Of a stretch of 64,000 nt of DNA, positions 11,500 through 44,722 are shown piece after piece. Each line of letters starts with the position of its first letter. The stretch's first letter is position 1. The stretch covers positions 214,436 through 278,435 of the IMG/VR virus record IMGVR_UViG_3300044641_009805. One strand, written 5' to 3'. Both the position numbers and the translations under genes were made by a program. The notes below the pieces were generated by a model. The model did not search any database. It had not been told where the DNA came from and saw only the letters and a program-made list of their open reading frames with translations.

Positions 11500-13185
11500 A
11501 TGTTAGATATTTCAATTCTAGAACTAAAAAAAGCAGTCAAGACTCCGAAGGCTGCCTCTAATTTTATCAGAAAGCATATCAAGGTTGTCGAGAAAATCGA
11601 CGGAACGAAACTTACCTTGATACGCAATGATGCGCAATTTGACCCAAATGACTATACAAAAAACTGGATTATTTCGTATAAGGGAAACATCATTTATTCT
11701 ACGGAATTTTCTGGATTGGAAAAGAGAGATAAAGACATTAAAACGTCTGGGCTAGGTACGTCTCAATATAAATTTGTGTATGATCATTTGAAAAGAGTCC
11801 ATGAAGGAACTGCTTCAATTCCTCTCAATACAGAATTTTTTATAGAATTTGTTCAAAATAAACCTACTGTAACTAGAGATTATGCGAAGAAACACGGCAT
11901 GTTCTTGGTCGGATTTGGGCCGGCAGTGTATGCATCATCTAAAGGGCAAATCTATTCTTCATCCACATTTGTTGATGATCCTGCTAAGTTAGAAGAGTAC
12001 AGAGAAATATTACAGTTAAATTCTTTTCCATTACTCTACGAAGGTAATTTGTCTTCTAGGACGGAGATATTCGATAATAGCGAATATCTTGATCCAAGGC
12101 TTAGAGAATTATTCTCACAGAATCTAGAGACAGTGGATTTTTCAAATCCGCAAGAGATTCTTGACGGAGTTGTTAGTTCTTTTCAAGCTTTGGAGTCCTC
12201 GTTAGGAGGACAATCAGAAGGAGTTGTCATCACCGTCGAAGGTGATGACATGTCTGAGAAGCAGCTATATAAAGTTTTAGCAGCCGATCAACACAACAAA
12301 GAAGTAAGAGAGAAAAAGAAATCTAGGTATAAGGGCACCCCGCAAGAAGAAGCAGCGTATTGGGAAGACATCAACGCTACTACTGATCTAATTCTGGACG
12401 AATTGCAGATTGATGCTAGGGATTCTCGACCTGAAGAAGCGTTGAAAGACTTGTCGGCAAGAGTTTATGAGATGTCTGAAGAAGACATAGGAGCATATCA
12501 TCCTGTTAAAACTCTTTTAAATAAGCAAGAAGATTTAATGCTGACTGCTAAAACCAGATTGTTCGTTTTAGGTCATAGACTCAAAAAGATAGCTGTCATT
12601 CCTATGGCTGCAAAACCTTTTCACAGAGGTCATCAAGCGTTATTGGATGCAGCAGAAGCAGACGGAAATGAATTAATTCTAGTGTATGTATCTACGGGGG
12701 GAAGAGACGAAATAAGTTCTTCTGACATGGTCCCGTTGTGGAAAAACTACTACTTGCCAGCCATACAAGAGACGTATGGAGATAAGGTCGCCATCAGGTT
12801 CACAAAAGGAATTTCTCCCATGTATGAACTGAGATCTGCAATCTCCAACCTAGTCAGACAATCAGAAGAAACAGTAGTGACTCTTTATGGAGATCCAGAA
12901 GATGCTGCCCGCCGCGTCGACGATATAATCAATAACGAAAAAAACGTGGTTGATCTAACGAGAAAAGTCGTGGCAGGATCGGTACCCAGAGAATCTTCCG
13001 GCGGAATTTCTGGCACAAAAATGAGAGAATTTTTGTCGACTGGACAAAGAGAACAGTTCATGAAGAATTTGCCTGATTTTTTGAACGAAGATTCAAAACT
13101 AGCAATTTGGAATTCTTTGTCAAAAAGTAAAGTTTCGCAAAGTGAAAATCTATTGAAATCATATGTAAGATTAATTCTTGCATAA
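11500..13185 (+). CDS. Fusion: ligase-type adenylyltransferase domain + HxGH (cytidylyltransferase/NMNAT-like) domain
   Basis: EKIDGT (motif I), FFIEF (III), SEGVVI (IV), LYK (V); C-terminal KPFHRGH and ISGTKMR. Confidence 0.75.
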   Translation: MLDISILELKKAVKTPKAASNFIRKHIKVVEKIDGTKLTLIRNDAQFDPNDYTKNWIISYKGNIIYSTEFSGLEKRDKDIKTSGLGTSQYKFVYDHLKRVHEGTASIPLNTEFFIEFVQNKPTVTRDYAKKHGMFLVGFGPAVYASSKGQIYSSSTFVDDPAKLEEYREILQLNSFPLLYEGNLSSRTEIFDNSEYLDPRLRELFSQNLETVDFSNPQEILDGVVSSFQALESSLGGQSEGVVITVEGDDMSEKQLYKVLAADQHNKEVREKKKSRYKGTPQEEAAYWEDINATTDLILDELQIDARDSRPEEALKDLSARVYEMSEEDIGAYHPVKTLLNKQEDLMLTAKTRLFVLGHRLKKIAVIPMAAKPFHRGHQALLDAAEADGNELILVYVSTGGRDEISSSDMVPLWKNYYLPAIQETYGDKVAIRFTKGISPMYELRSAISNLVRQSEETVVTLYGDPEDAARRVDDIINNEKNVVDLTRKVVAGSVPRESSGGISGTKMREFLSTGQREQFMKNLPDFLNEDSKLAIWNSLSKSKVSQSENLLKSYVRLILA

Positions 13186-13742
13186 TGAGAATTTTTTTTA
13201 GTTCTGACACTCACTACTTTCATGCGAACATCATAAAATATTGTGATAGACCTTTTAAAACTGTCGATGAAATGAATGAATTCATGATAGACGCGTGGAA
13301 TTCATTCGTAGATGAAGATGATTTAACTTTTCATCTTGGCGATTTTTCGTTGTTGCGTCCCGTGGACTCCGATCAACTAAGAGATGTAATAACCAGATTA
13401 AAAGGTAAGAAAATTCTCGTTAAAGGTAACCATGACAAAGATAGTGACTCGTTTTTTTTAGATGCAGGGTTTAAAAAAGTATACGATTCTATCAACGTAG
13501 CAGGCGTTTTGCTTGTCCATTATCCGTTGCACGAAGCTTTTTCTAGAAAAGTAAAAGATTCTCATTGGGGTGAAGTGTCTCACGTAATACATGGACATTC
13601 ACACGATAAAAAAAATCCTAATCTAGAAAATCATTACAATGTAGCCGTAGACAGGCATGAATTTTGTCCTGTTTCTTTGCAACAAGCAGTTCCTGAAAAT
13701 TTGCAAAAGAATTTCTTTTTAGAAGCAGTTAAGCTTTTTTGA
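13185..13742 (+). CDS. Calcineurin-like metallophosphoesterase
   Basis: SDTHYFH, LGDF, GNHD, HYP, HGHSH. Confidence 0.9.
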   Translation: MRIFFSSDTHYFHANIIKYCDRPFKTVDEMNEFMIDAWNSFVDEDDLTFHLGDFSLLRPVDSDQLRDVITRLKGKKILVKGNHDKDSDSFFLDAGFKKVYDSINVAGVLLVHYPLHEAFSRKVKDSHWGEVSHVIHGHSHDKKNPNLENHYNVAVDRHEFCPVSLQQAVPENLQKNFFLEAVKLF

Positions 13743-13783: not shown

Positions 13784-14851
13784 ATGCAACGTTCATTGTG
13801 CTTCGATGATGTACTGCTCGTCCCTCAACTTTCAGACATAGAGTCTAGATCGCATGTAGATCTTTCAGTGCCGGGATTTGACTCCGCTTTTGCTAGCTTA
13901 ACCGACAAACACGAACAATTAAAGTGTCCCATTGTCGGTTCTCCTATGGACACAGTAATAAGTCCTCAGTCGGCGGCTGTCATTGCAAAGCTTGGAGGCT
14001 TCGGAGTTTTGCATCGATACTGTTCAATCGATGATTCTAAAAAGATGTTTCTTGAAACGGCTAAACTATTGCTTGATGATTGTGACAATAGTTCTTCAGC
14101 TTTTATCCCGAACTTGATGGTGGCTGTTGGTGCGACGGGTGATTATCTTGAAAGAGCAGGTGAACTATACGACGTGGGTTGTAGGGCTTTCTGCGTTGAT
14201 GTTGCGCATGGTCACCACACAAATGTTAAAAATGCTCTAAATAAGCTAAGAGTAAAATTTGGTAAAAAAATTCACATAATGACTGGCAACGTTGCAACTT
14301 TGGAAGCCTTCAATGATCTTGCTGACTGGGGTGCTGATTCCATACGTACCGGTGTCGGAGGAGGATCCATGTGTACAACGAGAATTCGCACGGGACATGG
14401 AGTTCCAACGCTGCAATCAATCATCGATTGTGCAAAATCCGACAGGGACGTTTACATTGTAGCAGATGGTGGAATTAGGAACAGCGGCGATGCAGTGAAA
14501 GCTCTAGCTGCTGGAGCGGACATGGTGATGCTAGGATCAGTTCTTGCTGGACATGATGAATCCCCAGGAGCAATCATTACAAAAGACAACCAACGTTACA
14601 AGAAGTTTCGCGGAATGGCTTCAAGAGAAGCGCAATTGGAATGGAGAGGTAAGGTGTCCGTTGCTGAAGGAGAGTCAACGTTGATCCCTTACAGAGGTTC
14701 TCTTCAAGATACTTTGACAGACCTGCTTGAAGGCATTAAATCAGGTCTGTCATATTCAGGCGCTAAAAGTATTAGAGAGTTTAGAAGCAAAGCTAAATTT
14801 TTAGGTATCACTTCAAATGCTGTCAAAGAAAATGGTCCTCACGGAAAGTGA
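13784..14851 (+). CDS. IMP dehydrogenase / GMP reductase family (no CBS domains)
   Basis: [28 protein letters not shown] catalytic Cys loop, ADGGIR, FRGMAS. Confidence 0.9.
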
Positions 14852-15396: not shown

Positions 15397-18300
15397 ATGA
15401 CGAGAGACAATAAAACAGCTTCACCTACCAGATTCGTGGGTCTTCATGCGCATTCTACATTTTCGCAGTACGATGGTCTCGATTATCCTCAAGAGCACAT
15501 TGATTACGTGCTAGAAAATGGCATGGACGCTTGGTCGTTGACTGACCATGGTAACATGAATGGATTCTGTCACGCTTTTCTTCATGCCGAAAAGATGAAA
15601 AAGTCAGGAAAGAACTTTAAGTTTATCCCTGGCTGCGAGATGTACGTTCATCCTGATCTTACCCAGTGGAAAAAAGATCTGGAAGCGTCCAAGGTAAAAC
15701 CTGCAAAGGACGAGTCCATCATTACTCCTATCACCGCGGTCGTTGATGGCGATGACGAGACGACAGACGTTGGTACGGATGAAGCAGCTTTGACTGTTGA
15801 GAACGAGGACGAGACGAAGTCAGGTAAATACAATGATCCCGTCAAGCGTCGTCATCATCTAGTCGTTCTACCAAAAACCTCAGTAGGCCTTCAACGTCTG
15901 TTCCACCTGGTATCCAGGGGATACATGGAAGGATTTTATCGATTCCCTCGAATCGATTATTCGATGCTAAAAGAAGCAGCAAAAGGTGATCATCTCATGA
16001 TCAGCACAGCTTGTTTAGGTGGTCCTTTGGCTTTCGACGCTTTCGAACAGCTTCAAAAAGTTCCGTTCGAAGAATTGAAACACCAATTGCTTAACGACAG
16101 ATCACTTTTGGATCGTATCATTGCTACGATGAGTAACACTTACGACAAGTTAGTTGATGCCGTCGGTCGCGATAACGTATGTCTTGAACTACAATTCAAC
16201 AAGCTCCCTGCTCAGCATCTTGTTAATCGAGCTCTCATTGAGTTTTCCAAACGAAATTCCCTGCGCGATAGAGTGGTGGTTACTTGCGACTCGCACTATT
16301 CACGACCAGAAAACTGGAAAGAACGAGAGATTTATAAGAAGCTAGGTTGGCTTAACTATCAAAACTTTGATCCAAGCTTGTTGCCTAAGTCTAAGGACGA
16401 TTTAAAATGCGAATTGTATCCCAAAAATGCCAAGCAGGTGTGGGAATCTTATTTGTCTACGACGGAAGGCATGGATTTCTATGACGATGAATTTGTTAAG
16501 GACGCGATTGAAAGAACCCATGATATCGTTCATAACGAATTAGGTGACATTCAGCCTGACAAGACAATGAAGCTTCCTTCTTACGTGATCCCTGAGGGAA
16601 CCACGGAAGATAAGGCACTCGTGGTTGCGTGTAAAAATGGATTGAAGTGGAGAGGTCTAGACTCAAGACAAGACTACATCGACAGAATCAAATATGAGCT
16701 AGGCATCATCAAAGGTAAGAAGTTCTCTAGGTACTTCTTGACGATGAAGGCTATCATGGATATTGCTCGTGAGCATATGTTGATCGGACCAGGTCGTGGA
16801 TCAGCTGCTGGTTCACTTGTAGCCTATGTTCTTGGAATTACGAATTTGGATCCAATTGAATATGATCTTTCTTTTGAAAGATTTTTGAATCCTTCTAGAA
16901 CAGGTGCCCCTGATATTGACTCTGACATCTCTGATCGAGATTTATTGATTGAACTTCTTAGAAAGAATCTTGGCGAAAGGAACGTCATTCCTATCTCCAA
17001 CTACAACACCTTCAGGTTAAAGAGCCTCATTAAAGATATTGCTCGATTCTACAGTATCCCTTTTGAGGAAGTCAACGCTGCTCTTGCTCCTGTCGAGGAT
17101 GATGTCAAGAAGGAGGTCTTTAAACCAGGAACAGACAAGAACTTGTTCGTTCTTACATACGAAGACGCCATCAAATATTCAAAGTCTCTACAAGACTTCA
17201 TTGCTGCACACCCCGAGGTGGCCGAACCAATTGAGATTTTATTCAAGCAAAACCGTTCTTTGGGCCGCCACGCCGGTGGCGTCATCGTATCAGAAGATGT
17301 CGCCGAAAGAATGCCTCTAATCCTTGCTCGCGGTGAGGCCCAGACACCTTGGGTCGAAGGCATGAACTATAAACATCTCGAAGAATTTGGGTGGATCAAG
17401 TTCGATCTGCTAGGTCTTGAAACCTTGCGTATCATCGAACGATGCATCGGCCTAATCCTCGAGCGCCGGGAAGGTGTAAAAAATCCTGATTTTAAGCAAA
17501 TTCGAGCGTGGTTTGATAAGCATATGGATCCGAAGAACATTGATCTGAACGATCAAAAAGTCTACGAATATGTTTACCACGAAGGTAGGTTCGCAGGTAT
17601 CTTCCAGCTAACACAAACAGGTGCTCAGCGGCTGTTTACGAAGGCTAAACCACGTAGCATCATCGACATTGCCACTCTTACTTCGATCTATCGTCCTGGT
17701 CCTCTTGCGGCTAACGTGGATAAACTTTATATTGATGCAAAGAATAATCCTGACAAGATTGATTATCAACATCCGTTGATCAAAAAAGTCCTCGAGTCTA
17801 CATACGGTTGTATCATCTTTCAAGAGCAGACCATGAGGTTATGTTCTGTGGTGGCGGGATTCCCTGAGGCTGAGACTGACACCATCCGTCGTAACATTAT
17901 GAAGCGCAGCGCGTCTAAGAAAGACGATGCTGCAGCGGATGCGAGGAAAGCAAAAGAAGAGTTCGTGTTAGGTGCTGTGAAGAATGGCGTAAACGAGAAG
18001 GTCGCATCTGAACTATACGATAAGATTCTATTCTTCTCTGGATACGGCTTTAATGCCTCGCATGCCGTGTCTTATGCAATTGATTCTTACTATTGCGCTT
18101 GGCTCTTGACTTATTATGAAGAGGAATGGCTATGCGCATATCTCGAATCGATGTCAGGAAACGACGAGAAACGAGCCAAAGCTTTTTCAGAAGTAAAAGC
18201 GCTAGGATATAAGATCGTTCCAATTGACGTAAACTACGCGACAAAGAGCTGGACAATCTTGGAAGGTAAACGATTCATGCCAAGCTTCTTGTCTTGCAAG

Positions 18301-18981
18301 GGAATTGGAGAGGCTGCTATCGATGAAATCGTCGAGAACAGACCTTACAAGAGTGTCGAAGAGATGTTGTGGAATGATGATGGTTCATGGAAACATTCCA
18401 AATTTAACAAGCGAGCTTTTGAAGGTCTCATCTCCATCAGAGCGTTTGACTCTCTTGACTGCGTAGGTGAAGGAAAAACATTTAACAGCTACAAACAGAT
18501 GCATCACATCTTGATTGATAAAGGTGCCGATATCAAGAAAACTTCAAAGAAAAATCCTACTCTCGGTATGGAAAACTTTCGAAATCTTTTGATAGAAACA
18601 AATGACATGGATGAGTGGACTCGTGGGGAGTTGGTTGACAACAGCGTGAAATATCTTGGATCATTCAACTCTAACATTTTAGTTTCTCAAGAACTGATTG
18701 CAAAGCTAGAATCTAAAGGTGTCAAATCCATCGACCTCATCGAGCAAACTGACGTTTATTGGTTCATTATTTCTGACGTAAAAGAAAAAAAGACGAAGAA
18801 CGGAAAGCCATACTTGCTTCTGACGGCAATAGGCCTTGAAGGCCAAACCCGTCGGATCTTTTGTTGGGGATGGGATGGCCGAACTGAGTTGCCGAAGTAC
18901 TCCACATGCATAGCAGAAATTACTGTCGATAATTACGGTAATAAAACTTTTATGAGCAAGGTTAAGGTAATCGATGAATAA
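15397..18981 (+). CDS. dnaE: DNA polymerase III alpha subunit (family C)
   Basis: PHP motifs LHAHS, TDHG, GCE; GRGSAAGS, PDIDSD, KFDLLGL, GYGFNASH; C-terminal OB fold. Confidence 0.96.
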   Translation: MTRDNKTASPTRFVGLHAHSTFSQYDGLDYPQEHIDYVLENGMDAWSLTDHGNMNGFCHAFLHAEKMKKSGKNFKFIPGCEMYVHPDLTQWKKDLEASKVKPAKDESIITPITAVVDGDDETTDVGTDEAALTVENEDETKSGKYNDPVKRRHHLVVLPKTSVGLQRLFHLVSRGYMEGFYRFPRIDYSMLKEAAKGDHLMISTACLGGPLAFDAFEQLQKVPFEELKHQLLNDRSLLDRIIATMSNTYDKLVDAVGRDNVCLELQFNKLPAQHLVNRALIEFSKRNSLRDRVVVTCDSHYSRPENWKEREIYKKLGWLNYQNFDPSLLPKSKDDLKCELYPKNAKQVWESYLSTTEGMDFYDDEFVKDAIERTHDIVHNELGDIQPDKTMKLPSYVIPEGTTEDKALVVACKNGLKWRGLDSRQDYIDRIKYELGIIKGKKFSRYFLTMKAIMDIAREHMLIGPGRGSAAGSLVAYVLGITNLDPIEYDLSFERFLNPSRTGAPDIDSDISDRDLLIELLRKNLGERNVIPISNYNTFRLKSLIKDIARFYSIPFEEVNAALAPVEDDVKKEVFKPGTDKNLFVLTYEDAIKYSKSLQDFIAAHPEVAEPIEILFKQNRSLGRHAGGVIVSEDVAERMPLILARGEAQTPWVEGMNYKHLEEFGWIKFDLLGLETLRIIERCIGLILERREGVKNPDFKQIRAWFDKHMDPKNIDLNDQKVYEYVYHEGRFAGIFQLTQTGAQRLFTKAKPRSIIDIATLTSIYRPGPLAANVDKLYIDAKNNPDKIDYQHPLIKKVLESTYGCIIFQEQTMRLCSVVAGFPEAETDTIRRNIMKRSASKKDDAAADARKAKEEFVLGAVKNGVNEKVASELYDKILFFSGYGFNASHAVSYAIDSYYCAWLLTYYEEEWLCAYLESMSGNDEKRAKAFSEVKALGYKIVPIDVNYATKSWTILEGKRFMPSFLSCKGIGEAAIDEIVENRPYKSVEEMLWNDDGSWKHSKFNKRAFEGLISIRAFDSLDCVGEGKTFNSYKQMHHILIDKGADIKKTSKKNPTLGMENFRNLLIETNDMDEWTRGELVDNSVKYLGSFNSNILVSQELIAKLESKGVKSIDLIEQTDVYWFIISDVKEKKTKNGKPYLLLTAIGLEGQTRRIFCWGWDGRTELPKYSTCIAEITVDNYGNKTFMSKVKVIDE

Positions 18982-19507
18982 CATGCATACTGTCGTAATT
19001 TTTGAAGGATGTGATAAAGTTGGTAAGACTGAAATGGCTCGTGAGCTTTCGCGACGAATGGAGATTCCATATTTCAAGAATAAATCAGAATGGAAAGCGT
19101 TTAGCTCAGATCCAGATTATTTCGTGAAGGCTCTTCGATACGGAGACCCTTACTTCTACACTTTTCTTCGAGACACCAAGACGTCTGTTATTCTTGATCG
19201 ATCGTACCCTTCAGAGTGGGTGTATTCAAGAGTTTACGATAGAAAGACCGATCATGATGCTCTGTCTCATATTGATTTTCTTGCAGCTTCTTTTGGCGTT
19301 AAGATAGTCATTCCGTATAGGACTTCTTATTCTGGTCTAAAAGACGATATTCATAACATAGGCGAATATCATCTACAAAAATTGTCAGACATGTATGAAG
19401 AATTTGCAAAGTGGACCAAATGTGACGTACTACGCTTTTGCATTGATTCTGAAAACCTAGAATGGGAAATGGAGACCATTCGTAAATTCTTGAAAAAGGA
19501 GGCATGA
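18974..19507 (+). CDS. Second dNMP kinase (thymidylate kinase-like), probably for a modified nucleotide
   Basis: FEGCDKVGKT P-loop, ILDRSYPSEWVY; coupled between dnaE and glycosyltransferase. Confidence 0.75.
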   Translation: MNNMHTVVIFEGCDKVGKTEMARELSRRMEIPYFKNKSEWKAFSSDPDYFVKALRYGDPYFYTFLRDTKTSVILDRSYPSEWVYSRVYDRKTDHDALSHIDFLAASFGVKIVIPYRTSYSGLKDDIHNIGEYHLQKLSDMYEEFAKWTKCDVLRFCIDSENLEWEMETIRKFLKKEA

Positions 19508-20532
19508 TGCGCATCGGAATTAGTTATTGGGGTTTTTGTGAGCCTTTTGGAGCATCAGGAGAAGCAAAAACGCCTGATGGTCATCGGTATGGTCGTCCTA
19601 TTTTTGTGAACGCAGCTGTCGCATCAGGACATCAGATTTATGCGTTACAAAAGCGTAGAGAAGTTGTGCCATATAAAAACATCAATTATGATGAGGGATT
19701 TCCTGACATAGATGTTTTATTTGTTGAGTGGCGATGGCCAACTTATAAAAATTCAGGAGAAAATCCTGCCGAACCTGATCTGCTCAGGCAAAATGAGCTT
19801 CTTCGGCACTATCACGGAAAGATTCCTGTCGTTATTTGGGATTGTGATTATAAGGTGACACCAGAAGATGAGCTAGCATGGCCTAAAGCTATAATTGCAG
19901 ATCCCGCATTTGAACCAAGATATTTGACCAGAAAAAGAGAAAGATTGATGTTTTGGACAGATTGGCAATTTTTGCTGCAACCGTCCAACGTGTCTTTTGA
20001 ATATGGCTATGTGGGAAACAATTATGAAAGACCAGAAGCATTTTATCAGTACTATTCCTCACCATCAAGAGAGCTAAGAAATCTGGGAATACAGACGACG
20101 GTTCATGGTAATTGGTTAGAAGTTTCTCCTGAGAGAGAACATCCTACATCATTGATAAAACAGCATCCCTTCGTTTCATTCGCTCAACGCTTGAATTTTC
20201 ATGATTCAATGAAAAGGTTGAATTCTTTTATCTGCGCAACACACATAACCAAGCCAGAATACGCCAAACGTGGGTTTGCGTCTCCTCGTTACTTAGAAAA
20301 TATGGCTGTGGGCACGCCTGCTTTGGTCCCATCAGAGTTTTTGATCCCAAACTTATTAGGAAGTGAGTGGACAGTATCGACGTCAGAACAAGTAATTGCT
20401 CAAGTTAAATACATCAGCAAACTTTCTTATGAATTCAGGGTTTCTTTAGTCAAAGAACAAATGACGATTTTGAAAAATAAGAATGTATTTTCTGTAAGCG
20501 ACGTAATAGATTTCTTGGAGACACTCGTATGA
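19504..20532 (+). CDS. GT-B glycosyltransferase resembling T4 DNA beta-glucosyltransferase
   Basis: GYVGN, VHGNW, ICATHITKPEYAKRGFASPRYLENMAVGTPALVPSEF parallels the recalled BGT C-terminal domain. Confidence 0.65.
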   Translation: MMRIGISYWGFCEPFGASGEAKTPDGHRYGRPIFVNAAVASGHQIYALQKRREVVPYKNINYDEGFPDIDVLFVEWRWPTYKNSGENPAEPDLLRQNELLRHYHGKIPVVIWDCDYKVTPEDELAWPKAIIADPAFEPRYLTRKRERLMFWTDWQFLLQPSNVSFEYGYVGNNYERPEAFYQYYSSPSRELRNLGIQTTVHGNWLEVSPEREHPTSLIKQHPFVSFAQRLNFHDSMKRLNSFICATHITKPEYAKRGFASPRYLENMAVGTPALVPSEFLIPNLLGSEWTVSTSEQVIAQVKYISKLSYEFRVSLVKEQMTILKNKNVFSVSDVIDFLETLV

Positions 20533-21530
20533 TGAAAAAAGATAAGGTTCTAATCACAGGCGTAGCTGGACTTCTTGGGGCAAATTTTTCTAGATATCTG
20601 TTGTCCAGAGGTTATGATGTCGTTGGGATTGATGATTTAAGCGGCGGATATCTAGATTCTGTTCCAAAAGAAATGACATTCTACGACGTAGACTTGGTAG
20701 ATCGTCATAAAACAGAAGAGGTATTTGCAAAAGAAAAACCTGATTATGTTTTCCATTTTGCTGCGTACGCAGCAGAAGGATTGAGTCCTTTCATTAGAAA
20801 TTACAACTACACAAACAACGTGTTAGCTTCCGCTAATGTAATTAATGCTTGTGTAAATCATGATATCAAAAAGATTGTTTTTACCTCATCGATGGCGGTA
20901 TATGGAGTAGGCAATCCACCCTTTACAGAAGATCAGCTACCAACCCCAGAGGATCCTTACGGTATTGCGAAATATGCAGTAGAGATGGATCTCAAACTTG
21001 CACATGAAATGTTTGGACTAAGATACAGCATTGTTCGCCCGCACAACGTTGTTGGCATTTATCAAAATATTTGGGATAGGTATCGAAACGTTATAGGCAT
21101 TTGGATTCGTAAAGCTCTTGTTGGAGAACCGCTGACTATCTTTGGAGACGGTACACAAAAACGTGCTTTTTCAGACATCAAGTTCTATATGGCTCCTTTT
21201 GAAAAGCTTATGACGTCTTTTGACGGTGAAACTTTCAACATAGGAGCTGATAAAGATTTCACAATTAACGAAGCTTGCGATCTCGTGATGGACGTTGCAG
21301 CTGAGCTTGGAGTTAAAGCGACCAAGGTTCATTTAGAAAAACGCAATGAAGTGCACACTGCATACTGCGATCACAGTAAAGCTCATAAGCTGTTAGGGTT
21401 TAAAGATGAAACTAATCTTAGAGATATGATTAAAGAAATGTTTGTCTGGGCTATGAAGCAGCCTGATAGACAAATAAAGAACATGGATTATGAGATTGAA
21501 AAGAACATGTACTCTTTTTGGAAGAAATGA
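20529..21530 (+). CDS. NAD-dependent NDP-sugar epimerase/dehydratase (extended SDR)
   Basis: ITGVAGLLG, HFAA, TSSMAVYG, PYGIAK (YxxxK), RPHNVVG, GDGTQKRAF. Confidence 0.92.
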   Translation: MMKKDKVLITGVAGLLGANFSRYLLSRGYDVVGIDDLSGGYLDSVPKEMTFYDVDLVDRHKTEEVFAKEKPDYVFHFAAYAAEGLSPFIRNYNYTNNVLASANVINACVNHDIKKIVFTSSMAVYGVGNPPFTEDQLPTPEDPYGIAKYAVEMDLKLAHEMFGLRYSIVRPHNVVGIYQNIWDRYRNVIGIWIRKALVGEPLTIFGDGTQKRAFSDIKFYMAPFEKLMTSFDGETFNIGADKDFTINEACDLVMDVAAELGVKATKVHLEKRNEVHTAYCDHSKAHKLLGFKDETNLRDMIKEMFVWAMKQPDRQIKNMDYEIEKNMYSFWKK

Positions 21531-22315
21531 TTATGACTTTTCCTGAAAAATTAGCTGATAGAGAAAAATACATTTTTGATCAAGTTTTAGCTGGCAATTT
21601 TGATGCAGAATGGGTTCCTCTCGAATTTTCTTCAGGAGGAAGAACCATTAAATTCAATGTGATGAATGATGCATTGAAAATTGACGGCATAAGAGTTAAT
21701 GTATCTGCAGAACTTCAGCAAAAGTTAGCAGATGTATTTAATGCGTCTTTATTGACAACACATATCGCTGACTTAATGTTTATCAATGCCACGCACCGAG
21801 TAGAGCCCTGTCCTATGACGATATCTTCGACAGTCGATTCTATGATTAAACACAGCAAAATGGTCGATGGAAAAGTTGGGTTTAATGTGACAGGATTAGT
21901 AGCTTCTCCTGGAAAGCATTGGATTTTAGATAAGAAACTAGACTTAAATCCTAGAAGAGCTTGTAACTATGGGTGGCATTTCGTTGGTACGAACTACAAG
22001 GGTATAAAAGGTCACCCAACTGGATCTAAGCAGAACAAGCTAAATGGATCGACGATGTCAGTGATCCAGCCGAATGCAACTGCCCATGATATGAAACATT
22101 CTGATTATTCTCAAATTTGTCAGCTTGTTTCTCAAGCTTGTTGGATCGACGGTGTCATACACCGTTTATCTGACGTTCTGCAAGATCCAACGAATTGTGA
22201 TCTTGCTACCGCTAATGGTCCTTTAAGTTTTGTTAGACAACCTGGTACGTCTCCTTTTGTCGGAACTTCTGTTATGTTTCCTGTAAAAATTACTTCGCAA
22301 GGAGGAATTGTATGA
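21527..22315 (+). CDS. Hypothetical protein
   Basis: Long ORF coupled by ATGA overlap; NYGWH, HSDYSQ conserved-looking blocks. Confidence 0.75.
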   Translation: MIMTFPEKLADREKYIFDQVLAGNFDAEWVPLEFSSGGRTIKFNVMNDALKIDGIRVNVSAELQQKLADVFNASLLTTHIADLMFINATHRVEPCPMTISSTVDSMIKHSKMVDGKVGFNVTGLVASPGKHWILDKKLDLNPRRACNYGWHFVGTNYKGIKGHPTGSKQNKLNGSTMSVIQPNATAHDMKHSDYSQICQLVSQACWIDGVIHRLSDVLQDPTNCDLATANGPLSFVRQPGTSPFVGTSVMFPVKITSQGGIV

Positions 22316-22500
22316 CGTATGAATACGAATGCAAAGCTTGCAATCATCAGTTTGAAGCGGAACAATCAATCAAAGATCCACCATTAACAAACTGCCCTCG
22401 TTGTAAGACTGACTTTTTAAGAAGGCTTATAAGCAAATCAACATTTGTTTTGAAGGGCTCTGGGTGGGCTGCTGATAACTATTCTTCAAAATCTTCTTAG
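22312..22500 (+). CDS. FmdB-family zinc-ribbon protein
   Basis: YEYECKACNHQFE..CPRC..RLIS..FVLKGSGW. Confidence 0.85.
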   Translation: MTYEYECKACNHQFEAEQSIKDPPLTNCPRCKTDFLRRLISKSTFVLKGSGWAADNYSSKSS

Positions 22501-23225
22501 TAAGTAGGTAGCGTGTGTTGTCTCAGCGGACAATCACTTTTGTTGCGAGATGATCTAGAAGCAGGATGCCCAGGTTTCAAGAGGTTGTGTAAGTCTTCTC
22601 CTTCTTTGCTAGCAAAGACTGATTTGACTTCGCCTGTTTCACTATTAAAGATAATAGTATACCCGCCTCTGGACATATCTAGAGGCTTTTTTATAGTGTT
22701 CATATAATCGAACCTACCTGCTTTACTCATCTCCCTATCAAACCAAGCTTCAAGCACAAAGTTAGAGACAGAAACGGGCGTGCCATTGACATCAATCTCA
22801 TACGAGTCTCCTTGAACGGGGTCGCACAATTCCAATGCTACGAAAGTATGATCTCCTCTATTCGACCAAAGATTGACGTAGGGATTGTAGAATGTTTCAA
22901 GTATTTCGTGAGATAGGACGACCGAAACAGCGTGAGTTCCCTTCAACGTAGTTCCGCCATGCTTCAATAACGGGTCCGTAAAAACTCTACACCAAACTCT
23001 TCCGTCAGGATCTTGCGTATGGTATCCAAGAGCACCAGCAACATCTGGAGAGTTAATAAGAACAACGGGGAATCCATCATTACCACCTACCTTTATCTCC
23101 CATGGCATCCTTTCCAGGAGCGGGGCTGCTTGTTGCGTTAACTGTATTTTGCAGGCTTCAACCATGAGGTTCAAATCTGCTTCGGAAACGTTGGTCGATT
23201 TATTGATGACATTAAACGTTCTCAT
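22497..23225 (-). CDS. Hypothetical protein, possible zincin-like peptidase
   Basis: GYHT, LSHEILE, ELCDPVQ..VSNFV. Confidence 0.7.
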   Translation of the reverse strand: MRTFNVINKSTNVSEADLNLMVEACKIQLTQQAAPLLERMPWEIKVGGNDGFPVVLINSPDVAGALGYHTQDPDGRVWCRVFTDPLLKHGGTTLKGTHAVSVVLSHEILETFYNPYVNLWSNRGDHTFVALELCDPVQGDSYEIDVNGTPVSVSNFVLEAWFDREMSKAGRFDYMNTIKKPLDMSRGGYTIIFNSETGEVKSVFASKEGEDLHNLLKPGHPASRSSRNKSDCPLRQHTLPTY

Positions 23226-23238: not shown

Positions 23239-23277
23239 AAACAAGCTTGTTTATAATTTAAAAAGGTGTATAATCAT

Positions 23278-24246
23278 ATGAGAATTTTATTGACGGGTGG
23301 TGCGGGCTTCATAGGCAGTAACGTCGCAAAAAGGTTGTTGGCAGAAAATATAGAGTTTGACATCGTTGACGATCTATCGAACGGTCACATGTCGTTTGTT
23401 GATCCTTCGCTGCTGGATCGTAACATTACGATTGCCAGCTTCGACTCCGAAACAATCTTAGCAAAGATAAGGTCTGGATTGTACGATGTTGTTATACACT
23501 TGGCGGCCGTCCCGCGTGTGAGTTATTCCGTCGATTTTCCCCTTGAGTCTCACAACGCAAACGTGACAGCAACAATGAAATTGATTGATGCTTGTCGAGG
23601 AAAGATTAAACGTTTTGTCTTTGCATCCTCGTCCTCTGTTTATGGAGGTGCTGACCAGCTACCAACTCCTCCTGATACCGCAAAGAATCCTAAATCACCT
23701 TACGCTTTGCAAAAATCTATAATTGAAGATTATTTGAAGATGTATTACGATCTTTATGGGTTCGATTCAGTCAGCCTAAGGTTCTTTAACGTCTTTGGTC
23801 CAAATCAATTAGGAAATTCTCCTTATTCCACAGCGGTTTCTGCGTGGGTTAATGCAATTATGAAGGGGACTTCGATGCGTTCTGACGGAGACGGAACGCA
23901 ATCTCGCGACATGTGTTATGTTGATAATGTTGCCGATGCATGCGTAAGAGCAGCAAAGGCAAATTTCCCATTAAAGTCTGAAACTTTAAATGTGGCTTGT
24001 GGCGACAGGACAACAAATAGAGAAATTTTGCAATTTTTGTTGAAAAAATTTCCTGATGCGAAATACCATGATGCTCCTTGGAGACCTGGCGATGTCATGC
24101 ACACTCAAGCTGATATTTCTAGGACAAAAGAAGTTTTAGGTTACACTCCCCTGGTGTATTTTTGGGAAGGATTGGAAAAAACAATCCAGTGGTATCAGGA
24201 CAATTGGGAACTAATTAAAACGTTGAGTGATAAAGAGAATATATGA
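23278..24246 (+). CDS. NAD-dependent NDP-sugar 4-epimerase (WbpP/GalE-like extended SDR)
   Basis: LTGGAGFIGS, HLAA, ASSSSVYG, SPYALQK, LRFFNVFGP, GDGTQSRD. Confidence 0.92.
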   Translation: MRILLTGGAGFIGSNVAKRLLAENIEFDIVDDLSNGHMSFVDPSLLDRNITIASFDSETILAKIRSGLYDVVIHLAAVPRVSYSVDFPLESHNANVTATMKLIDACRGKIKRFVFASSSSVYGGADQLPTPPDTAKNPKSPYALQKSIIEDYLKMYYDLYGFDSVSLRFFNVFGPNQLGNSPYSTAVSAWVNAIMKGTSMRSDGDGTQSRDMCYVDNVADACVRAAKANFPLKSETLNVACGDRTTNREILQFLLKKFPDAKYHDAPWRPGDVMHTQADISRTKEVLGYTPLVYFWEGLEKTIQWYQDNWELIKTLSDKENI

Positions 24247-25241
24247 AAGTTTTTTCTAGCTTCACTGAAGCCTACTATGATCTGCTTCTAGACGTCTACA
24301 AGCATCCTGACTTTGTTTCTTCTCCTCGAGGGCAGAAGATCAGAGAAAAGTTGGGCGTATCATTCAGGATTTCTAATCCTCTTGATAGATTACCGTATGT
24401 AGAGCAAAGAGACTTTAGCTTATCATATTTTGTTGCAGAGTCTTTGTGGTATCTTTCTGGAAACGATTCCACTGAATGGATATCGAATTATTCTTCTTTT
24501 TGGAAGAACATTTCTGATGATGGCACTACAGCTAACAGCGCTTACGGCGCCAGGATTTTTAATCCTCATTCAAGAATTGCTGGTCAAATCGATCCTTCTT
24601 GGACACAATGGGATTACATCTTGAATGAACTGACGACAGATCCAGATTCTCGCCGAGCCGTCGTTCATATTAGATCTCCTCAGGATTCTATCCTAGCCTC
24701 AAAGGACGTTCCTTGCACTTTGTCTTTGCAGTTTTTTTTGCGTAACGATCAGGTTCACATGATAGTCTCTATGAGATCATCTGATCTCATCTTAGGAATT
24801 GCGTATGATGTTCCTGCATTCACGTTGTTTCAAGAGTTGTTGGCTAATCAATTATCGGATAGGCTGAACAGGTCTATAAGCGTTGGTGAGTATACTCACG
24901 TAAGCAATTCTTTGCATATTTATGAAAAGCATTTTGGAATGGTAGAAGAAATTCTAAAAAAACGAGAGTTTTTTAGTTTAGAAATGCCGAAGCTACCAAA
25001 GGGTAAACTACCTTTAGAATATATTTTGGAGCAAGAATCCAAGTGCAGAAATTGTCAGACTATTGATGAATTAAAACAGTTGGCTTCTAATCTCAATGCT
25101 GGTTCTGAATATTGGAATGATTGGTGCAAGATTTTAATTTCGCATAGAGCAAATAAGTTAAAAGGTGTTGATTCTGAAAACTTTAAGTTAGTCCTCTTGA
25201 AATCAACGGAATTTAACGGCTATAAATTTTTTAACAAATAA
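24243..25241 (+). CDS. Thymidylate synthase homolog of dCMP-modifying type (dCMP hydroxymethylase-like)
   Basis: SRRAV, DVPC (catalytic Cys), MRSSDLILGIAYD with Asp at the Asn177-equivalent site, SLHIYE; ThyX already present. Confidence 0.8.
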   Translation: MKVFSSFTEAYYDLLLDVYKHPDFVSSPRGQKIREKLGVSFRISNPLDRLPYVEQRDFSLSYFVAESLWYLSGNDSTEWISNYSSFWKNISDDGTTANSAYGARIFNPHSRIAGQIDPSWTQWDYILNELTTDPDSRRAVVHIRSPQDSILASKDVPCTLSLQFFLRNDQVHMIVSMRSSDLILGIAYDVPAFTLFQELLANQLSDRLNRSISVGEYTHVSNSLHIYEKHFGMVEEILKKREFFSLEMPKLPKGKLPLEYILEQESKCRNCQTIDELKQLASNLNAGSEYWNDWCKILISHRANKLKGVDSENFKLVLLKSTEFNGYKFFNK

Positions 25242-25247: not shown

Positions 25248-25811
25248 ATGTCAAATCCTCAATTCATACTCTATACGGGTCCAATGTTTTCTAGCAAAAC
25301 AACCGGACTGCTGTCTTCAATAGATCGTTTTAAATACCAAAACAAACGAGTAGCTGTGTTTAAGCCGCGCTTAGATGATAGATACAGTGAAGAGTATATT
25401 TGTACTCATAGCGGGTGGAAAGTACCTGCCATTTGCATAAAAGAAGGAACCGACATACTTGAAAAATTGTCAGAGATGAATGAAAATCCTCATGTCGTGG
25501 CTGTTGATGAAGCATTCATGATACCAGGTATTTCGAAAGTTTTAGTCTGGCTTTATAGAAGTGGATATTCGATAGTGGTATCGTCATTAGATCTATCAGC
25601 CAGCGGAAAACCGTTCAATGAAATTGAAAAAATGCTGCCTTGGGCAACCCAGGTGGAAAAACGGACGGCGGTCTGTACAGTCTGCAGCAAAGATGCTCAT
25701 TACACATACAAAAAGCAGATTGGAGGAAATGAAATAGAGGTCGGCGGAGCTGAACTTTATGAACCAAGATGTTTAAAGTGTCATCCAGTAATATTTGATC
25801 CGGCTAGCTGA
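25248..25811 (+). CDS. tdk: Thymidine kinase (type II)
   Basis: GPMFSSKT, FKPRLDDRY, VDEAF, CTVC..YEPRCLKC. Confidence 0.92.
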   Translation: MSNPQFILYTGPMFSSKTTGLLSSIDRFKYQNKRVAVFKPRLDDRYSEEYICTHSGWKVPAICIKEGTDILEKLSEMNENPHVVAVDEAFMIPGISKVLVWLYRSGYSIVVSSLDLSASGKPFNEIEKMLPWATQVEKRTAVCTVCSKDAHYTYKKQIGGNEIEVGGAELYEPRCLKCHPVIFDPAS

Positions 25812-25812
25812 A

Positions 25813-26253
25813 ATGATTGATAGGAAAAAATTAAAGCTTTCTGTTTTCATGCAAATGTGCAGGGACCTGTCTGTTCTTTCATATGATCCGAAATACAAGG
25901 TAGCTTCAATTATTATCACTCCAGACTTTAGAGAAGTTTGTGCTATCGGGTATAACGGAGGATACAAAGGCGGGCCTAACGAGAGAAGTTCTTTAGACCA
26001 CGGTAACTCAGGATTTCTCCATGCCGAAGAAAATGCTCTTTTTCATCTTTGCAAGCCTTATGAACTTCGATCTGGACTAATCATGCTATGTACTCATAAG
26101 CCTTGCTCAATGTGTGCCCGTCGCATCGTGAATAGTGGAATTCAAAATGTTGTCTATGAAGTCGATTATTTAGATAAAGAGTCTGCTACAGATGAGATAT
26201 TCAAGAATAGCAATACTTCTTGTAAAAAGTATGAAGATATAATTTCTTTATAA
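25813..26253 (+). CDS. dCMP deaminase
   Basis: GYNG, HAEENA, PCSMC zinc-deaminase motifs. Confidence 0.9.
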   Translation: MIDRKKLKLSVFMQMCRDLSVLSYDPKYKVASIIITPDFREVCAIGYNGGYKGGPNERSSLDHGNSGFLHAEENALFHLCKPYELRSGLIMLCTHKPCSMCARRIVNSGIQNVVYEVDYLDKESATDEIFKNSNTSCKKYEDIISL

Positions 26254-44648: not shown

Positions 44649-44687
44649 AAGATTTATGTATCTTCATTGCCACCAAGTGTTCAATGT

Positions 44688-44716: not shown

Positions 44717-44722
44717 ATTAGT

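What the first reader, a model, noticed from the sequence alone, without database searches (positions are those of the whole stretch)
19504..20532. Remote T4 beta-glucosyltransferase-like enzyme
Seen: C-terminal half reads GYVGN...TTVHGNW...LNSFICATHITKPEYAKRGFASPRYLENMAVGTPALVPSEF...WTVSTSEQVIAQVKYISKLSYEFRVSLVKEQMTIL. From memory of T4 BGT the matching stretch is IYGG...IEFFGN...NSQAIAALIIGDKNYNDNFITLRVWETMASDAVMLIDEEF...FYVNNRAELIDRVNELKHSDVLRKEMLSIQHDIL, with similar length and spacing. The N-terminal acceptor-binding half looks unrelated. Inference: DNA glycosyltransferase with altered acceptor context or donor; a possible new reagent for hmC labelling.
Basis: partly seen in the sequence, partly recalled or inferred. 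Interest (0 to 1): 0.7.

Follow-up and report, generated by a model that had tools for sequence, protein, structure and literature searches.

The report
Distant T4 BGT relative, likely DNA glycosyltransferase
This gene of an uncultured 278-kb phage encodes a real but very distant relative of the phage T4 enzyme that puts sugar on modified cytosine in DNA. It sits in a conserved gene set for making that modified cytosine, so it most likely sugar-coats the phage's own DNA.

Summary
Pairwise similarity to T4 beta-glucosyltransferase (BGT) is not significant. Profile methods show specific homology.

- **Family vs BGT family:** a 127-member family profile gives HHalign probability 98.8%, E 9.5e-17, over 318 columns. 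The same profile gives 3% against a GT4 family and 0.8% against T4 AGT.
- **Active site:** the BGT catalytic Asp100 aligns with the near-invariant D115. BGT-family invariants R195, Y261, R269 and E272 are also matched.
- **Fold:** the AF2 model (pLDDT 92.9) is a GT-B fold. T4 BGT (Z 21.5) ties with generic GT4 enzymes, so the fold alone does not discriminate.
- **Context:** in 7 of 7 contexts, down to 24% identity, the GT lies next to a ThyA homolog. That homolog carries the T4 gp42 signature (143 D/N, 169 D, 177 D), which predicts a dCMP hydroxymethylase and not a 5-hydroxy-dCMP synthase. A Tmk-like kinase is usually adjacent, PolIII-alpha is usually close, and the larger relatives add sugar epimerases or UDP-galactopyranose mutase.
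- **Cultured parallel:** Lactobacillus phage ATCCB carries homologs of the same kinase and ThyA-like genes beside a true BGT-family GT.

Best reading: an inverting DNA 5hmC glycosyltransferase whose donor is possibly UDP-Gal or UDP-GalNAc. It is a new member of a known kind (Pyle et al. 2023; Lee et al. 2026). No biochemistry was done.

The parts
19504..20532 (+). GT-B glycosyltransferase, 342 aa. It is a deep-branching relative of T4 beta-glucosyltransferase and the predicted DNA 5hmC glycosyltransferase. Putative catalytic base D115; nucleotide-sugar site Y169, G171, R176, Y253, R262, E265.
   Evidence: ORF; family alignments A1 and A2; AF2 model pLDDT 92.9; fold matches; HHalign to the BGT family 98.8%, E 9.5e-17; controls; residue map; HMMER cross-detection.
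18974..19507 (+). Thymidylate-kinase-like P-loop nucleotide kinase, 177 aa. Its stop overlaps the GT start by 4 nt. Predicted to phosphorylate the modified dCMP.
   Evidence: phrog_761 thymidylate kinase, E 3e-11. BLASTP 27% identity, E 2e-8, to RB69p045 and to Lactobacillus phage ATCCB ORF44. An unannotated 166-177 aa ORF occupies the same position directly upstream of the GT in L012, L014, L015 and L026; L027 has a 192-aa ORF with a faint Tmk hit three genes upstream. Only the RB69 and ATCCB proteins were actually compared with the window's kinase.
20529..21530 (+). SDR nucleotide-sugar 4-epimerase 1 (GalE-like), 333 aa. Its start overlaps the GT stop by 4 nt.
   Evidence: PF01370, E 4.5e-49; nearest solved protein 4zrm, a UDP-glucose 4-epimerase, E 1e-42; same position in L012 and L014.
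23266..24246 (+). SDR nucleotide-sugar 4-epimerase 2 (WbgU/WbpP/TviC-like, UDP-HexNAc type), 326 aa.
   Evidence: PF01370, E 2.5e-48; NCBIfam TviC 159.6 bits, below its cut-off; nearest solved proteins 6dnt, WbgU and WbpP, E 1e-47 to 1e-55; conserved in L012 and L014.
24243..25241 (+). ThyA-family enzyme, 332 aa, predicted dCMP hydroxymethylase (5hmdCMP synthase). In E. coli numbering: C146, 143 D, 147 T, 165 M, 169 D, 177 D.
   Evidence: PF00303 at 99 bits; alignments and signature table with E. coli ThyA, T4 gp42, RB69 gp48 and SPO1 gp29 as controls; diagnostic residues taken from PMC13326640. The phage also has ThyX.
15397..18981 (+). DnaE-type DNA polymerase III alpha, 1194 aa. It is the replicative polymerase and is linked to the module in most relatives.
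   Evidence: tblastn hits annotated as DnaE-like polymerases; PHP and DNA_pol3_alpha domains next to the GT and ThyA-like genes in L012, L015, L016, L026 and L027.
25795..26253 (+). dCMP deaminase, 152 aa (nucleotide-pool context, together with thymidine kinase at 25248-25811).
   Evidence: PF00383, E 9e-16; PF00265, E 1.6e-39; recurs near the module in L012, L014 and L015.

Best explanation
The ORF encodes a GT-B glycosyltransferase of a large, so far metagenome-only family that is a deep branch of the T4 beta-glucosyltransferase superfamily.

Proposed pathway:
1. The linked ThyA homolog converts dCMP to 5-hydroxymethyl-dCMP (inferred from active-site residues).
2. The adjacent Tmk-like kinase and host kinases raise it to the triphosphate (inferred).
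3. The phage PolIII-alpha incorporates it into DNA (inferred).
4. After replication, the GT transfers a sugar from a UDP-sugar to the hydroxymethyl group of 5hmC in phage DNA. D115 would act as the general base in an inverting, BGT-like reaction that gives a beta-linkage (inferred from homology).
5. The two linked 4-epimerases suggest the donor is an epimerised sugar such as UDP-Gal or UDP-GalNAc rather than UDP-Glc (weak inference).

The purpose would be protection of phage DNA from host nucleases, as in T-even phages.
For: **Shown by computation**
1. Specific homology to BGT.
   - HHalign of A2 vs the BGT family A3: probability 98.8%, E 9.5e-17, 318 columns covering both domains.
   - A1 vs A3: 90.8%. 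A2 vs the single T4 BGT sequence: 97%, E 1e-10.
   - Controls with the same profile: T4 AGT 0.8%; eleven neighbouring ORFs of the phage's glycan cluster, among them the GT4-type enzymes, <=16%; a GT4 family profile 3.2%, E 0.014.
   - The A2 HMM finds BGT-family proteins at E 1e-16 to 1e-13, and the BGT HMM finds distant A2 members at about 2e-9, both with Z = 1e6.
2. Residue correspondence: BGT D100 = D115, W117 = W126, Y186 = Y169, G188 = G171, R195 = R176, Y261 = Y253, R269 = R262, E272 = E265. All are invariant or >=90% conserved in the 127-member alignment. D100 is the accepted catalytic Asp, used in the same way by Pyle et al..
3. The confident model is a GT-B fold. T4 BGT 1c3j scores Z 21.5 over 297 residues (rank 2) and T4 AGT scores Z 20.3.
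4. Gene context. In 7 of 7 informative contexts (own window, L012, L014, L015, L016/17, L026, L027; GT identity 57% down to 24%) the GT lies beside or within a few genes of a ThyA homolog, usually with PolIII-alpha. The coding regions of kinase, GT and epimerase overlap by 4 nt.
5. All seven linked ThyA homologs have C146, 177 D, 169 D, 143 D or N, and 147 T, like T4 gp42. The RB69 gp48 control shows 169 N and the SPO1 gp29 control shows 177 N. The rules come from PMC13326640.
6. The phage has a separate ThyX, so the ThyA homolog is not needed for dTMP synthesis.
7. The cultured Lactobacillus phage ATCCB carries homologs of the same kinase (27% identity) and ThyA-like gene (37%, with the same 169 D / 177 D pattern) next to a true BGT-family GT (31% to T4 BGT) and Glf.
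Against: - No biochemical or DNA-composition data exist for this phage or for any family member.
- Structure search does not single out BGT: PimA, BshA, tll1591 and other GT4 enzymes score equally.
- The query itself does not reach Pfam PF09198 (BGT). It reaches PF13524 only below the cut-off, at 20.4 vs 25 bits.
- The BGT N-domain invariants N70, G73 and G74 have no aligned counterpart, and BGT E22 and D258 align with H27 and K250.
- No MazG-type dCTPase was found in the contig, which is 84% complete, so complete replacement of C is not supported.
- The genome also holds a separate cluster of GT4 enzymes at about 126-147 kb that the epimerases could serve instead.
- In this window the GT and the ThyA homolog are 3.7 kb apart, with two unknown ORFs between them.
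Confidence: 0.68

Rival explanations
1. It is a glycan-building enzyme (host surface polysaccharide or LPS, virion protein glycosylation, or a small-molecule acceptor). It would use sugars made by the neighbouring epimerases, and its place among nucleotide-metabolism genes would be incidental.
For: The best fold matches include PimA, BshA, PglA, WcaL, WaaG and the spore protein YkvP at the same scores as BGT. The only Pfam hit is the CgeB-type PF13524, below its cut-off. The genome invests heavily in GT4 enzymes elsewhere. Pyle et al. note that about 65% of mined phage GT contigs have no base-modification neighbour.
Against: Profile comparisons reject a GT4 affiliation (3% vs 98.8% for BGT). 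The gene lies about 90 kb from the GT4 cluster. Linkage to a ThyA homolog and PolIII-alpha holds in 7 of 7 contexts down to 24% identity, including small modules with no sugar genes at all. That pattern is hard to explain for a surface-glycan enzyme.
Confidence: 0.12
2. It glycosylates DNA, but the acceptor is 5-hydroxycytosine (ether-linked sugar), as in RB69, DLP3 and RL38J1, or 5-hydroxymethyluracil, rather than 5hmC.
For: RB69 (gp45-46:47-48), DLP3 (gp78-80) and RL38J1 (gp214-216, plus Glf) cluster the same three genes, kinase, first GT and ThyA homolog, in consecutive positions (in RB69 the transcription order is the reverse of the window's). The window's kinase is homologous to RB69p045. 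By BLAST the ThyA homolog is as close to RB69 gp48 as to T4 gp42, and its nearest cultured-phage hits include the SPO1-type dUMP hydroxymethylases.
Against: The diagnostic D169N of 5hodCMP synthases is absent: all seven linked ThyA homologs keep D169, while the RB69 control shows N. Position 177 is D, not N, which argues against dUMP as substrate. The two pieces of RB69 gp46:47 show no detectable homology to this family or to BGT.
Confidence: 0.12
3. It acts before replication on a free nucleotide (for example 5hmdCMP or 5hmdCTP), or on RNA or another nucleic-acid substrate, rather than on duplex phage DNA.
For: The gene is translationally coupled to a nucleotide kinase and sits among nucleotide-pool enzymes. 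The acceptor-side N-domain is strongly diverged from BGT and has its own invariant motifs (TPDGxR, EWRW).
Against: The sugar hypermodifications of phage DNA described in the papers read here are installed on DNA after replication (abstract of PMC13326640; Pyle et al.). A polymerase would have to accept a bulky sugar-nucleotide. No positive evidence was found.
Confidence: 0.05

Closest known systems
Phage T4 DNA beta-glucosyltransferase (BGT; Pfam PF09198; structures 1c3j, 1j39, 1qkj)
   Same: Both are two-domain GT-B folds of the same length (342 vs 351 aa). The families are homologous over the full length by profile-profile comparison (98.8%, E 9.5e-17). The catalytic Asp (D100 = D115) and the conserved C-domain residues (R195, Y261, R269, E272) are kept. 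In both phages the gene is linked to a gp42-type dCMP hydroxymethylase; in T4, b-gt is directly next to gene 42.
   Different: Identity is only about 15% and is undetectable by BLAST or by PF09198. The N-domain BGT motifs (N70, G73, G74, E22) are not kept and are replaced by family-specific invariants (TPDGxR, EWRWxTxKN, WDxDxK). The host phage is a 278-kb PolIII-alpha phage, not a T4-like one. The GT is linked to UDP-sugar 4-epimerases, or to Glf in relatives, which T4 lacks. No dCTPase was found.
Lactobacillus phage ATCCB module (MK504445: ORF44, thymidylate synthase homolog ORF45, 'beta-glucosyltransferase' ORF46, UDP-galactopyranose mutase ORF47)
   Same: It carries homologs of the window's kinase (27% identity, E 2e-8) and ThyA-like gene (37% identity, E 4e-49, same 169 D / 177 D pattern) beside a BGT-superfamily GT, with a Glf like that in relatives L014 and L015.
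   Different: Its GT is a regular BGT-family member (31% to T4 BGT; A3 HMM E 3e-73) and matches the window's family only weakly (E 1e-6). It is a Gram-positive phage of 80 kb. No DNA chemistry was found for it in the papers searched.
Metavirome GT-B DNA glycosyltransferases of Pyle et al. (GT53, GT66, GT94; bioRxiv 10.1101/2023.12.21.572611, later Cell Rep 2024)
   Same: They are phage GT-B enzymes with structural similarity to T4 BGT and a proposed catalytic Asp overlapping D100, and they are proven to add sugars to 5hmC in DNA. HMM mining in that paper found GT-B hits next to ThyS (about 28%), DNA polymerase, epimerases and dCMP deaminase in IMG/VR contigs.
   Different: The tested enzymes come from methyltransferase plus TET (post-replicative 5hmC) clusters, whereas this one is in a ThyA-type (pre-replicative) module. 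Whether this family was among their hits could not be checked, because no sequences were available here.
5-hydroxycytosine glycosylation clusters of RB69, DLP3 and RL38J1 (Lee et al., NAR 2026, PMC13326640)
   Same: The same three-gene logic: Tmk-like nucleotide kinase, first DNA GT and ThyA homolog, with Glf in RL38J1 as in L014 and L015. The kinase is homologous.
   Different: Their ThyA homologs carry D169N and make 5hodCMP, whereas this one keeps D169. The RB69 first GT is not detectably related to this family.

Membership tests
T4 BGT family (Pfam PF09198 / CAZy GT63) | GT-B fold: two Rossmann-like domains with an inter-domain cleft | tested here: met
   AF2 model pLDDT 92.9, pTM 0.90. 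1c3j scores Z 21.5 over 297 aligned residues at rmsd 3.9, and Foldseek TM is 0.63-0.66. The feature is not specific, because GT4 enzymes score the same.
T4 BGT family (Pfam PF09198 / CAZy GT63) | Sequence match to the family model | tested here: inconclusive
   The query does not hit PF09198 at E<=1, and none of 127 family members does at E<=0.01. Even so, profile-profile comparison gives 98.8%, E 9.5e-17, full length, and HMMs of each family detect the other. This fits a sister family in one superfamily, not membership of PF09198 as now drawn.
T4 BGT family (Pfam PF09198 / CAZy GT63) | Catalytic general base Asp100 on the N-domain loop after strand 4 (inverting mechanism) | tested here: met
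   D115 aligns with D100. It is invariant in A1 and >=90% conserved in A2, and it follows strand 109-112 of the model. The catalytic role is inferred.
T4 BGT family (Pfam PF09198 / CAZy GT63) | Conserved C-domain (nucleotide-sugar-binding domain) residues: R191, R195, Y261, R269, E272 | tested here: met
   R176 = R195, Y253 = Y261, R262 = R269 and E265 = E272, all >=90% conserved. R191 has no aligned partner. These are invariant or near-invariant columns of the BGT family alignment. Their assignment to UDP binding rests on my knowledge of the BGT structures.
T4 BGT family (Pfam PF09198 / CAZy GT63) | N-domain family invariants N70, G73, G74 and E22 | tested here: not met
   N70 and G73 are unaligned, G74 aligns with N87, and E22 aligns with H27. 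The N-domain has its own invariant motifs.
T4 BGT family (Pfam PF09198 / CAZy GT63) | Transfers glucose from UDP-Glc to 5hmC in duplex DNA with inversion | not testable with these tools
T-even-type 5hmC pathway | Linked ThyA homolog with the dCMP hydroxymethylase signature (177 D, 143 D/E, 169 D, C146) | tested here: met
   The window protein has C146, 143 D, 169 D and 177 D. The six linked relatives have the same pattern, with 143 D or N. Controls behave as published.
T-even-type 5hmC pathway | dCTPase (gp56 / MazG type) to exclude dCTP | tested here: not met
   There is no PF03819 or PF12643 match in the 278-kb contig. Only a split dUTPase-family gene was found. The contig is 84% complete, so absence is not proven.
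GT4 / Glycos_transf_1 (PF00534) retaining glycosyltransferases | Match to the family model | tested here: not met
   The query has no PF00534 hit, and only 1 of 127 family members has a weak one. HHalign to a GT4 family profile gives 3.2%, and to the phage's own GT4 proteins <=16%.
Glyco_trans_1_2 (PF13524, CgeB-like) | Score above Pfam's gathering threshold | tested here: inconclusive
   The query scores 20.4 bits against a cut-off of 25. 67 of 127 family members hit at E<=0.01. True BGT-family proteins also carry PF13524 hits, so this model does not separate the possibilities.
5hoC glycosylation systems (RB69 / DLP3 / RL38J1) | ThyA homolog with D169N (5hodCMP synthase) | tested here: not met
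   D169 is retained in the window protein and in all six linked relatives. RB69 gp48 shows N in the same alignment.

The most novel reading that the evidence does not exclude
Uncultured aquatic (including marine) phages that replicate with a PolIII-alpha polymerase, several on contigs of about 190-290 kb, carry 5hmC decorated with a sugar not yet reported on 5hmC. The sugar would be beta-galactose or GalNAc here and galactofuranose in the Glf-linked relatives. It would be installed by a previously unrecognised deep branch of the BGT superfamily whose acceptor-side domain has been rebuilt. That would give an enzyme with a new donor specificity, and perhaps a new sequence-context specificity, for 5hmC labelling.
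Probability: 0.3. Interest if true: 0.65.

Novelty: new member of a known kind. Interest (0 to 1): 0.5.

Why it matters
BGT is the standard enzyme for labelling 5hmC, and its family was long known almost only from T-even phages. This result shows that a distant sister family is widespread in uncultured phages: 377 clusters at 50% identity, many from aquatic samples, including contigs of about 190-290 kb. It is always tied to a gp42-type hydroxymethylase.

If the prediction holds, it extends pre-replicative 5hmC glycosylation to a PolIII-alpha-replicating phage lineage. The linked epimerases and Glf also point to new sugars on 5hmC. That would matter for the arms race between phages and host defences, and it would offer alternative 5hmC-tagging enzymes. 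It also gives a worked example in which fold search could not assign function but profile controls and synteny could.

Tried and rejected
- **Similarity searches that found nothing.** blastn and tblastn of the gene, and of two distant family members, against 50,697 phage records gave no match. phmmer and HMM searches of PDB sequences gave only chance TRAF6 hits. PHROGs and NCBIfam had no family for the GT.
- **Weak or negative comparisons.** Pairwise BLASTP to T4 BGT was not significant. The A1 (close homologs) profile against the single BGT sequence gave only 18%, so the diverse A2 profile was needed. T4 AGT was rejected as a relative (0.2-0.8%). The RB69 gp46 and gp47 pieces showed no homology.
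- **Structure libraries.** BFVD and Swiss-Prot AFDB gave generic GT-B hits. They included three SP-15 GTs, a 351-aa entry that is probably BGT, and a cyanophage alpha-GT, but nothing discriminating.
- **Protein-DNA modelling.** Complex prediction with duplex DNA was not folded, so it gives no evidence either way.
- **Regulatory signals.** The promoter and terminator scan of 13-27 kb gave counts at chance level.
- **dCTPase.** The MazG and MazG-like search was negative.
- **Neighbouring unknown ORFs.** The Atlas search of the two unknown ORFs inside the module returned only unnamed viral clusters.
- **Readings considered and rejected.** A dUMP hydroxymethylase / 5hmU reading was rejected because position 177 is D. 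A 5hoC reading was rejected because position 169 is D.
Full report
**Observation.** The window is the last 64 kb of a 278,435-bp IMG/VR viral contig, which CheckV estimates to be 84% complete. An ORF runs from ATG 19504 to the stop at 20532 on the + strand and encodes 342 aa. The resemblance is not significant pairwise: the best BLASTP E is 0.11, in another region, and the C-terminal stretch scores E 20. BLAST-type and PDB sequence searches found nothing. Pfam gives only Glyco_trans_1_2 (PF13524) at 20.4 bits, below its 25-bit cut-off. PHROGs and NCBIfam give nothing.

**The protein family.** The protein belongs to a large and sharply bounded family.
- A word-indexed search found 258 proteins at E<=0.001, nearly all 340-356 aa, from marine (Tara), JGI, ENA and Logan assemblies, on contigs of up to 288 kb.
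- An exhaustive profile search of 1.84 billion representatives found only 377 clusters at 50% identity.
- The close members (A1, 33 sequences) share many invariant residues, among them TPDGxR, EWRWxTxKN, WDxDxK, YGYVGNNYER, GNWL, HITK and SPRYxE.
- In a 127-sequence alignment that reaches 22% identity (A2), R77 and Y174 are invariant. D70, Q96, D113, D115, Y169, G171, R176, G202, W204, Y253, G257, R262 and E265 stay >=90% conserved.
- No family member was found in 50,697 deposited phage genomes by tblastn, even with distant members as queries.

**Fold.** AlphaFold2 with A1 gives a confident two-domain model (pLDDT 92.9, pTM 0.90). An exhaustive structural comparison ranks PimA (Z 21.7), T4 BGT 1c3j (Z 21.5, 297 residues, rmsd 3.9), BshA (21.5), tll1591 (21.1) and T4 AGT (20.3) as essentially equal. 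Foldseek likewise mixes GT4 enzymes with six T4 BGT entries, which have the highest identities in the list at 15%. BFVD and Swiss-Prot searches give generic GT-B hits, including LPS, colanic-acid and spore-protein GTs. The protein is therefore certainly GT-B, but fold search does not discriminate.

**Specific homology to BGT.** I built a BGT family alignment (A3, 31 sequences, down to 24% identity to T4 BGT) and compared profiles.
- A2 vs A3: probability 98.8%, E 9.5e-17, 318 aligned columns covering both domains.
- A1 vs A3: 90.8%, E 1.2e-6, C-terminal 179 columns.
- A2 vs the single T4 BGT sequence: 97.0%, E 1.1e-10.
- Controls with the same A2 profile: T4 AGT 0.8%; eleven neighbouring ORFs of this phage's own glycan cluster, among them its GT4-type enzymes, <=16.3%; a 39-sequence profile of the phage's 415-aa GT4 enzyme 3.2%, E 0.014.
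- Plain HMMER also bridges the two families. The A2 HMM scores BGT-family proteins at E 8e-17 to 1e-13, and the BGT HMM scores distant A2 members at about 2e-9, both with Z = 1e6.
- True BGT-family proteins also carry PF13524 hits, as do 67 of 127 members of this family.

The relationship is therefore specific to BGT and is not the generic GT-B resemblance.

**Residue correspondence.** In the A2/A3 alignment:
- BGT D100 aligns with D115. D100 is the catalytic Asp on which Pyle et al. also rely.
- W117 = W126, Y186 = Y169, G188 = G171, R195 = R176, G214 = G202, Y261 = Y253, R269 = R262, E272 = E265 and Q327 = Q319.
- BGT N70 and G73 are unaligned, G74 aligns with N87, E22 aligns with H27, and D258 aligns with K250.

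The donor-binding domain and the catalytic Asp are thus conserved, while the acceptor-side domain is heavily rebuilt.

**Gene neighbourhood.** The GT sits in a co-directional run of genes whose coding regions overlap by 4 nt:
- GMP reductase (13784-14851)
- PolIII-alpha (15397-18981)
- Tmk-like kinase (18974-19507)
- GT (19504-20532)
- GalE-like epimerase (20529-21530)
- Unknown 265-aa ORF (21518-22315)
- FmdB zinc ribbon (22312-22500)
- Unknown 242-aa ORF on the minus strand (22497-23225)
- WbgU/WbpP-like epimerase (23266-24246)
- ThyA homolog of 332 aa (24243-25241)
- Thymidine kinase (25248-25811)
- dCMP deaminase (25795-26253)

**Synteny in relatives.** Every relative with enough flanking sequence repeats the core arrangement.
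- L012/L013 (GT 57% identical): PolIII-alpha, a 177-aa ORF in the kinase position, GT, epimerase, ThyA-like, epimerase, TK.
- L014 (51%): epimerase, UDP-galactopyranose mutase (Glf), a 175-aa ORF in the kinase position, GT, epimerase, ThyA-like, GMP reductase, TK, dCMP deaminase.
- L015 (27%): dUTPase, Glf, a 175-aa ORF in the kinase position, GT, ThyA-like, dCMP deaminase, PolIII-alpha.
- L016/L017 (24%), L026 and L027: GT, ThyA-like and PolIII-alpha directly adjacent, with no sugar genes.

That makes 7 of 7 contexts. An eighth contig was too short to judge.

**The ThyA homolog.** It is most probably a dCMP hydroxymethylase. Lee et al. (PMC13326640) give three rules in E. coli numbering:
- N177D switches the substrate to dCMP.
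- L143D/E goes with hydroxymethyl rather than methyl products.
- D169N marks the newly found 5-hydroxy-dCMP synthases of RB69, DLP3 and RL38J1.

In my alignment the controls behave as published: E. coli ThyA has L/D/N, T4 gp42 D/D/D, RB69 gp48 E/N/D and SPO1 gp29 D/D/N at positions 143/169/177. The window's protein has D/D/D with C146, T147 and M165, exactly as T4 gp42 does. The six linked homologs have D or N at 143, D at 169 and D at 177. The phage also encodes a flavin-dependent ThyX (window 1371-2030), so the ThyA homolog is not needed for dTMP synthesis. T4 likewise carries both td and gene 42.

**A cultured parallel.** Lactobacillus phage ATCCB (MK504445) carries, in this order:
- ORF44, 27% identical to the window's kinase (E 2e-8);
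- a ThyA homolog 37% identical to the window's (E 4e-49), with D169 and D177;
- a GT that is a true BGT-family member (31% to T4 BGT; A3 HMM E 3e-73);
- Glf.

Homologs of the same kinase and hydroxymethylase genes are thus paired either with a regular BGT or with the window's family. This argues that the two GTs do the same job. T4 itself has b-gt directly next to gene 42.

**Mechanism proposed.**
- *Shown:* homology to BGT, conservation of the Asp and of the donor-domain residues, and linkage to a gp42-type enzyme, a nucleotide kinase and the replicase.
- *Inferred:* dCMP is converted to 5hmdCMP, raised to 5hmdCTP and incorporated. After replication, an inverting transfer from a UDP-sugar puts the sugar on 5hmC, with D115 as the general base.
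- *Weakly inferred:* the donor. Epimerase 1 is nearest to a UDP-glucose 4-epimerase (4zrm, E 1e-42). Epimerase 2 is nearest to the UDP-HexNAc 4-epimerases WbgU and WbpP (E about 1e-50). These point to UDP-Gal or UDP-GalNAc. Glf in L014, L015 and ATCCB points to galactofuranose there. The minimal modules with no sugar genes would use a host UDP-sugar.

**Against, and open points.**
- No MazG-type dCTPase was found, so complete replacement of C is unsupported.
- The genome has a separate GT4-rich cluster at about 126-147 kb that could use the epimerases.
- No experiment exists for any family member.
- The protein-DNA co-folding job was not run by the tool.

**Known work and novelty.** Pyle et al. 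(bioRxiv 2023; cited as Cell Rep 2024 in PMC12619734) showed that metaviromic GT-B enzymes structurally similar to BGT glycosylate 5hmC. Their HMM mining of IMG/VR found GT-B hits beside ThyS, polymerases, epimerases and dCMP deaminase. Lee et al. (2026) described kinase, GT and ThyA-homolog clusters for 5hoC glycosylation. The kind of system is therefore known. What is added here is a specific, large, uncharacterised sister family of BGT in PolIII-alpha phages. It comes with a residue-level catalytic prediction, an acceptor prediction of 5hmC rather than 5hoC or 5hmU, and hints of non-glucose donors. I rate it a new member of a known kind, with interest 0.5.

Noticed in passing
window 1371-2030 (+): A flavin-dependent thymidylate synthase ThyX (PF02511, E 3.7e-37) is encoded about 22 kb upstream of the ThyA homolog. 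The phage therefore has two thymidylate-synthase-type enzymes, as T4 has td and gene 42.
   Followed up: partly
outside the window: G000:C1:208718-210487: A dUTPase-family gene is split. Profile positions 5-70 match at 208787-208993 and positions 67-129 match at 210290-210478. Between them lies a 308-aa ORF that looks like a zinc-finger or homing-endonuclease gene, and the last piece has an intein-like C-terminal motif (NHNFF...VLVHN). It may be an intein or a mobile insertion; the three pieces are separate ORFs.
   Followed up: partly
outside the window: G000:C1:~126000-147300: A run of about 20 co-directional ORFs includes at least five GT4-type glycosyltransferases (PF00534 or PF13524 hits). 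One is a 415-aa enzyme with homologs 69-94% identical in very many assemblies, some of which carry Hint/intein domains (P0350, P0372). This is a separate glycan-building cluster of unknown target.
   Followed up: partly
window 21518-22315 (+) and 22497-23225 (-): Two ORFs of unknown function (265 and 242 aa) sit inside the module between epimerase 1 and epimerase 2, and are absent from the same place in relative L012. The Atlas search finds only unnamed, mostly viral clusters. The minus-strand ORF contains an HEILE motif.
   Followed up: partly
window 13784-14851, 26657-27385, 30760-31521, 37212-38456: Several auxiliary metabolic genes are present: GMP reductase/IMPDH family (E 2e-92), an Fe/Mn superoxide-dismutase-like protein, a carbon-nitrogen hydrolase, and an isocitrate lyase (E 2e-98). 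The last is unusual cargo for a phage.
   Followed up: no
proteins P0196, P0263, P0217 (family members from other contigs): Some family members have domain fusions. P0196 is GT plus a C-terminal SAM methyltransferase (612 aa). P0263 is a carbamoyltransferase C-terminal domain followed by the GT N-domain. P0217 is an N-terminal HTH_58 domain plus GT. These hint at further tailoring of the sugar or base in some phages.
   Followed up: no
L028 (Lactobacillus phage ATCCB, MK504445: 33827-37391): This cultured phage has a kinase, a gp42-type ThyA homolog, a BGT-family GT and UDP-galactopyranose mutase in a row. That predicts a galactofuranosyl- or glucosyl-5hmC genome. No report of this turned up in the papers searched.
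   Followed up: partly
window ~44000-49000 and 54000-60000: GC content rises to 0.45-0.49 here, against 0.35-0.40 for most of 2-36 kb, with negative GC skew and many overlapping ORFs on both strands. This is a compositionally distinct block.
   Followed up: no
window 11500-13185 (+): A 561-aa ORF has weak RNA-ligase (PF09414, E 8e-4) and citrate-lyase-ligase-like matches, followed by a calcineurin-like phosphoesterase (13185-13742). It may be an RNA or DNA end-repair pair.
   Followed up: no
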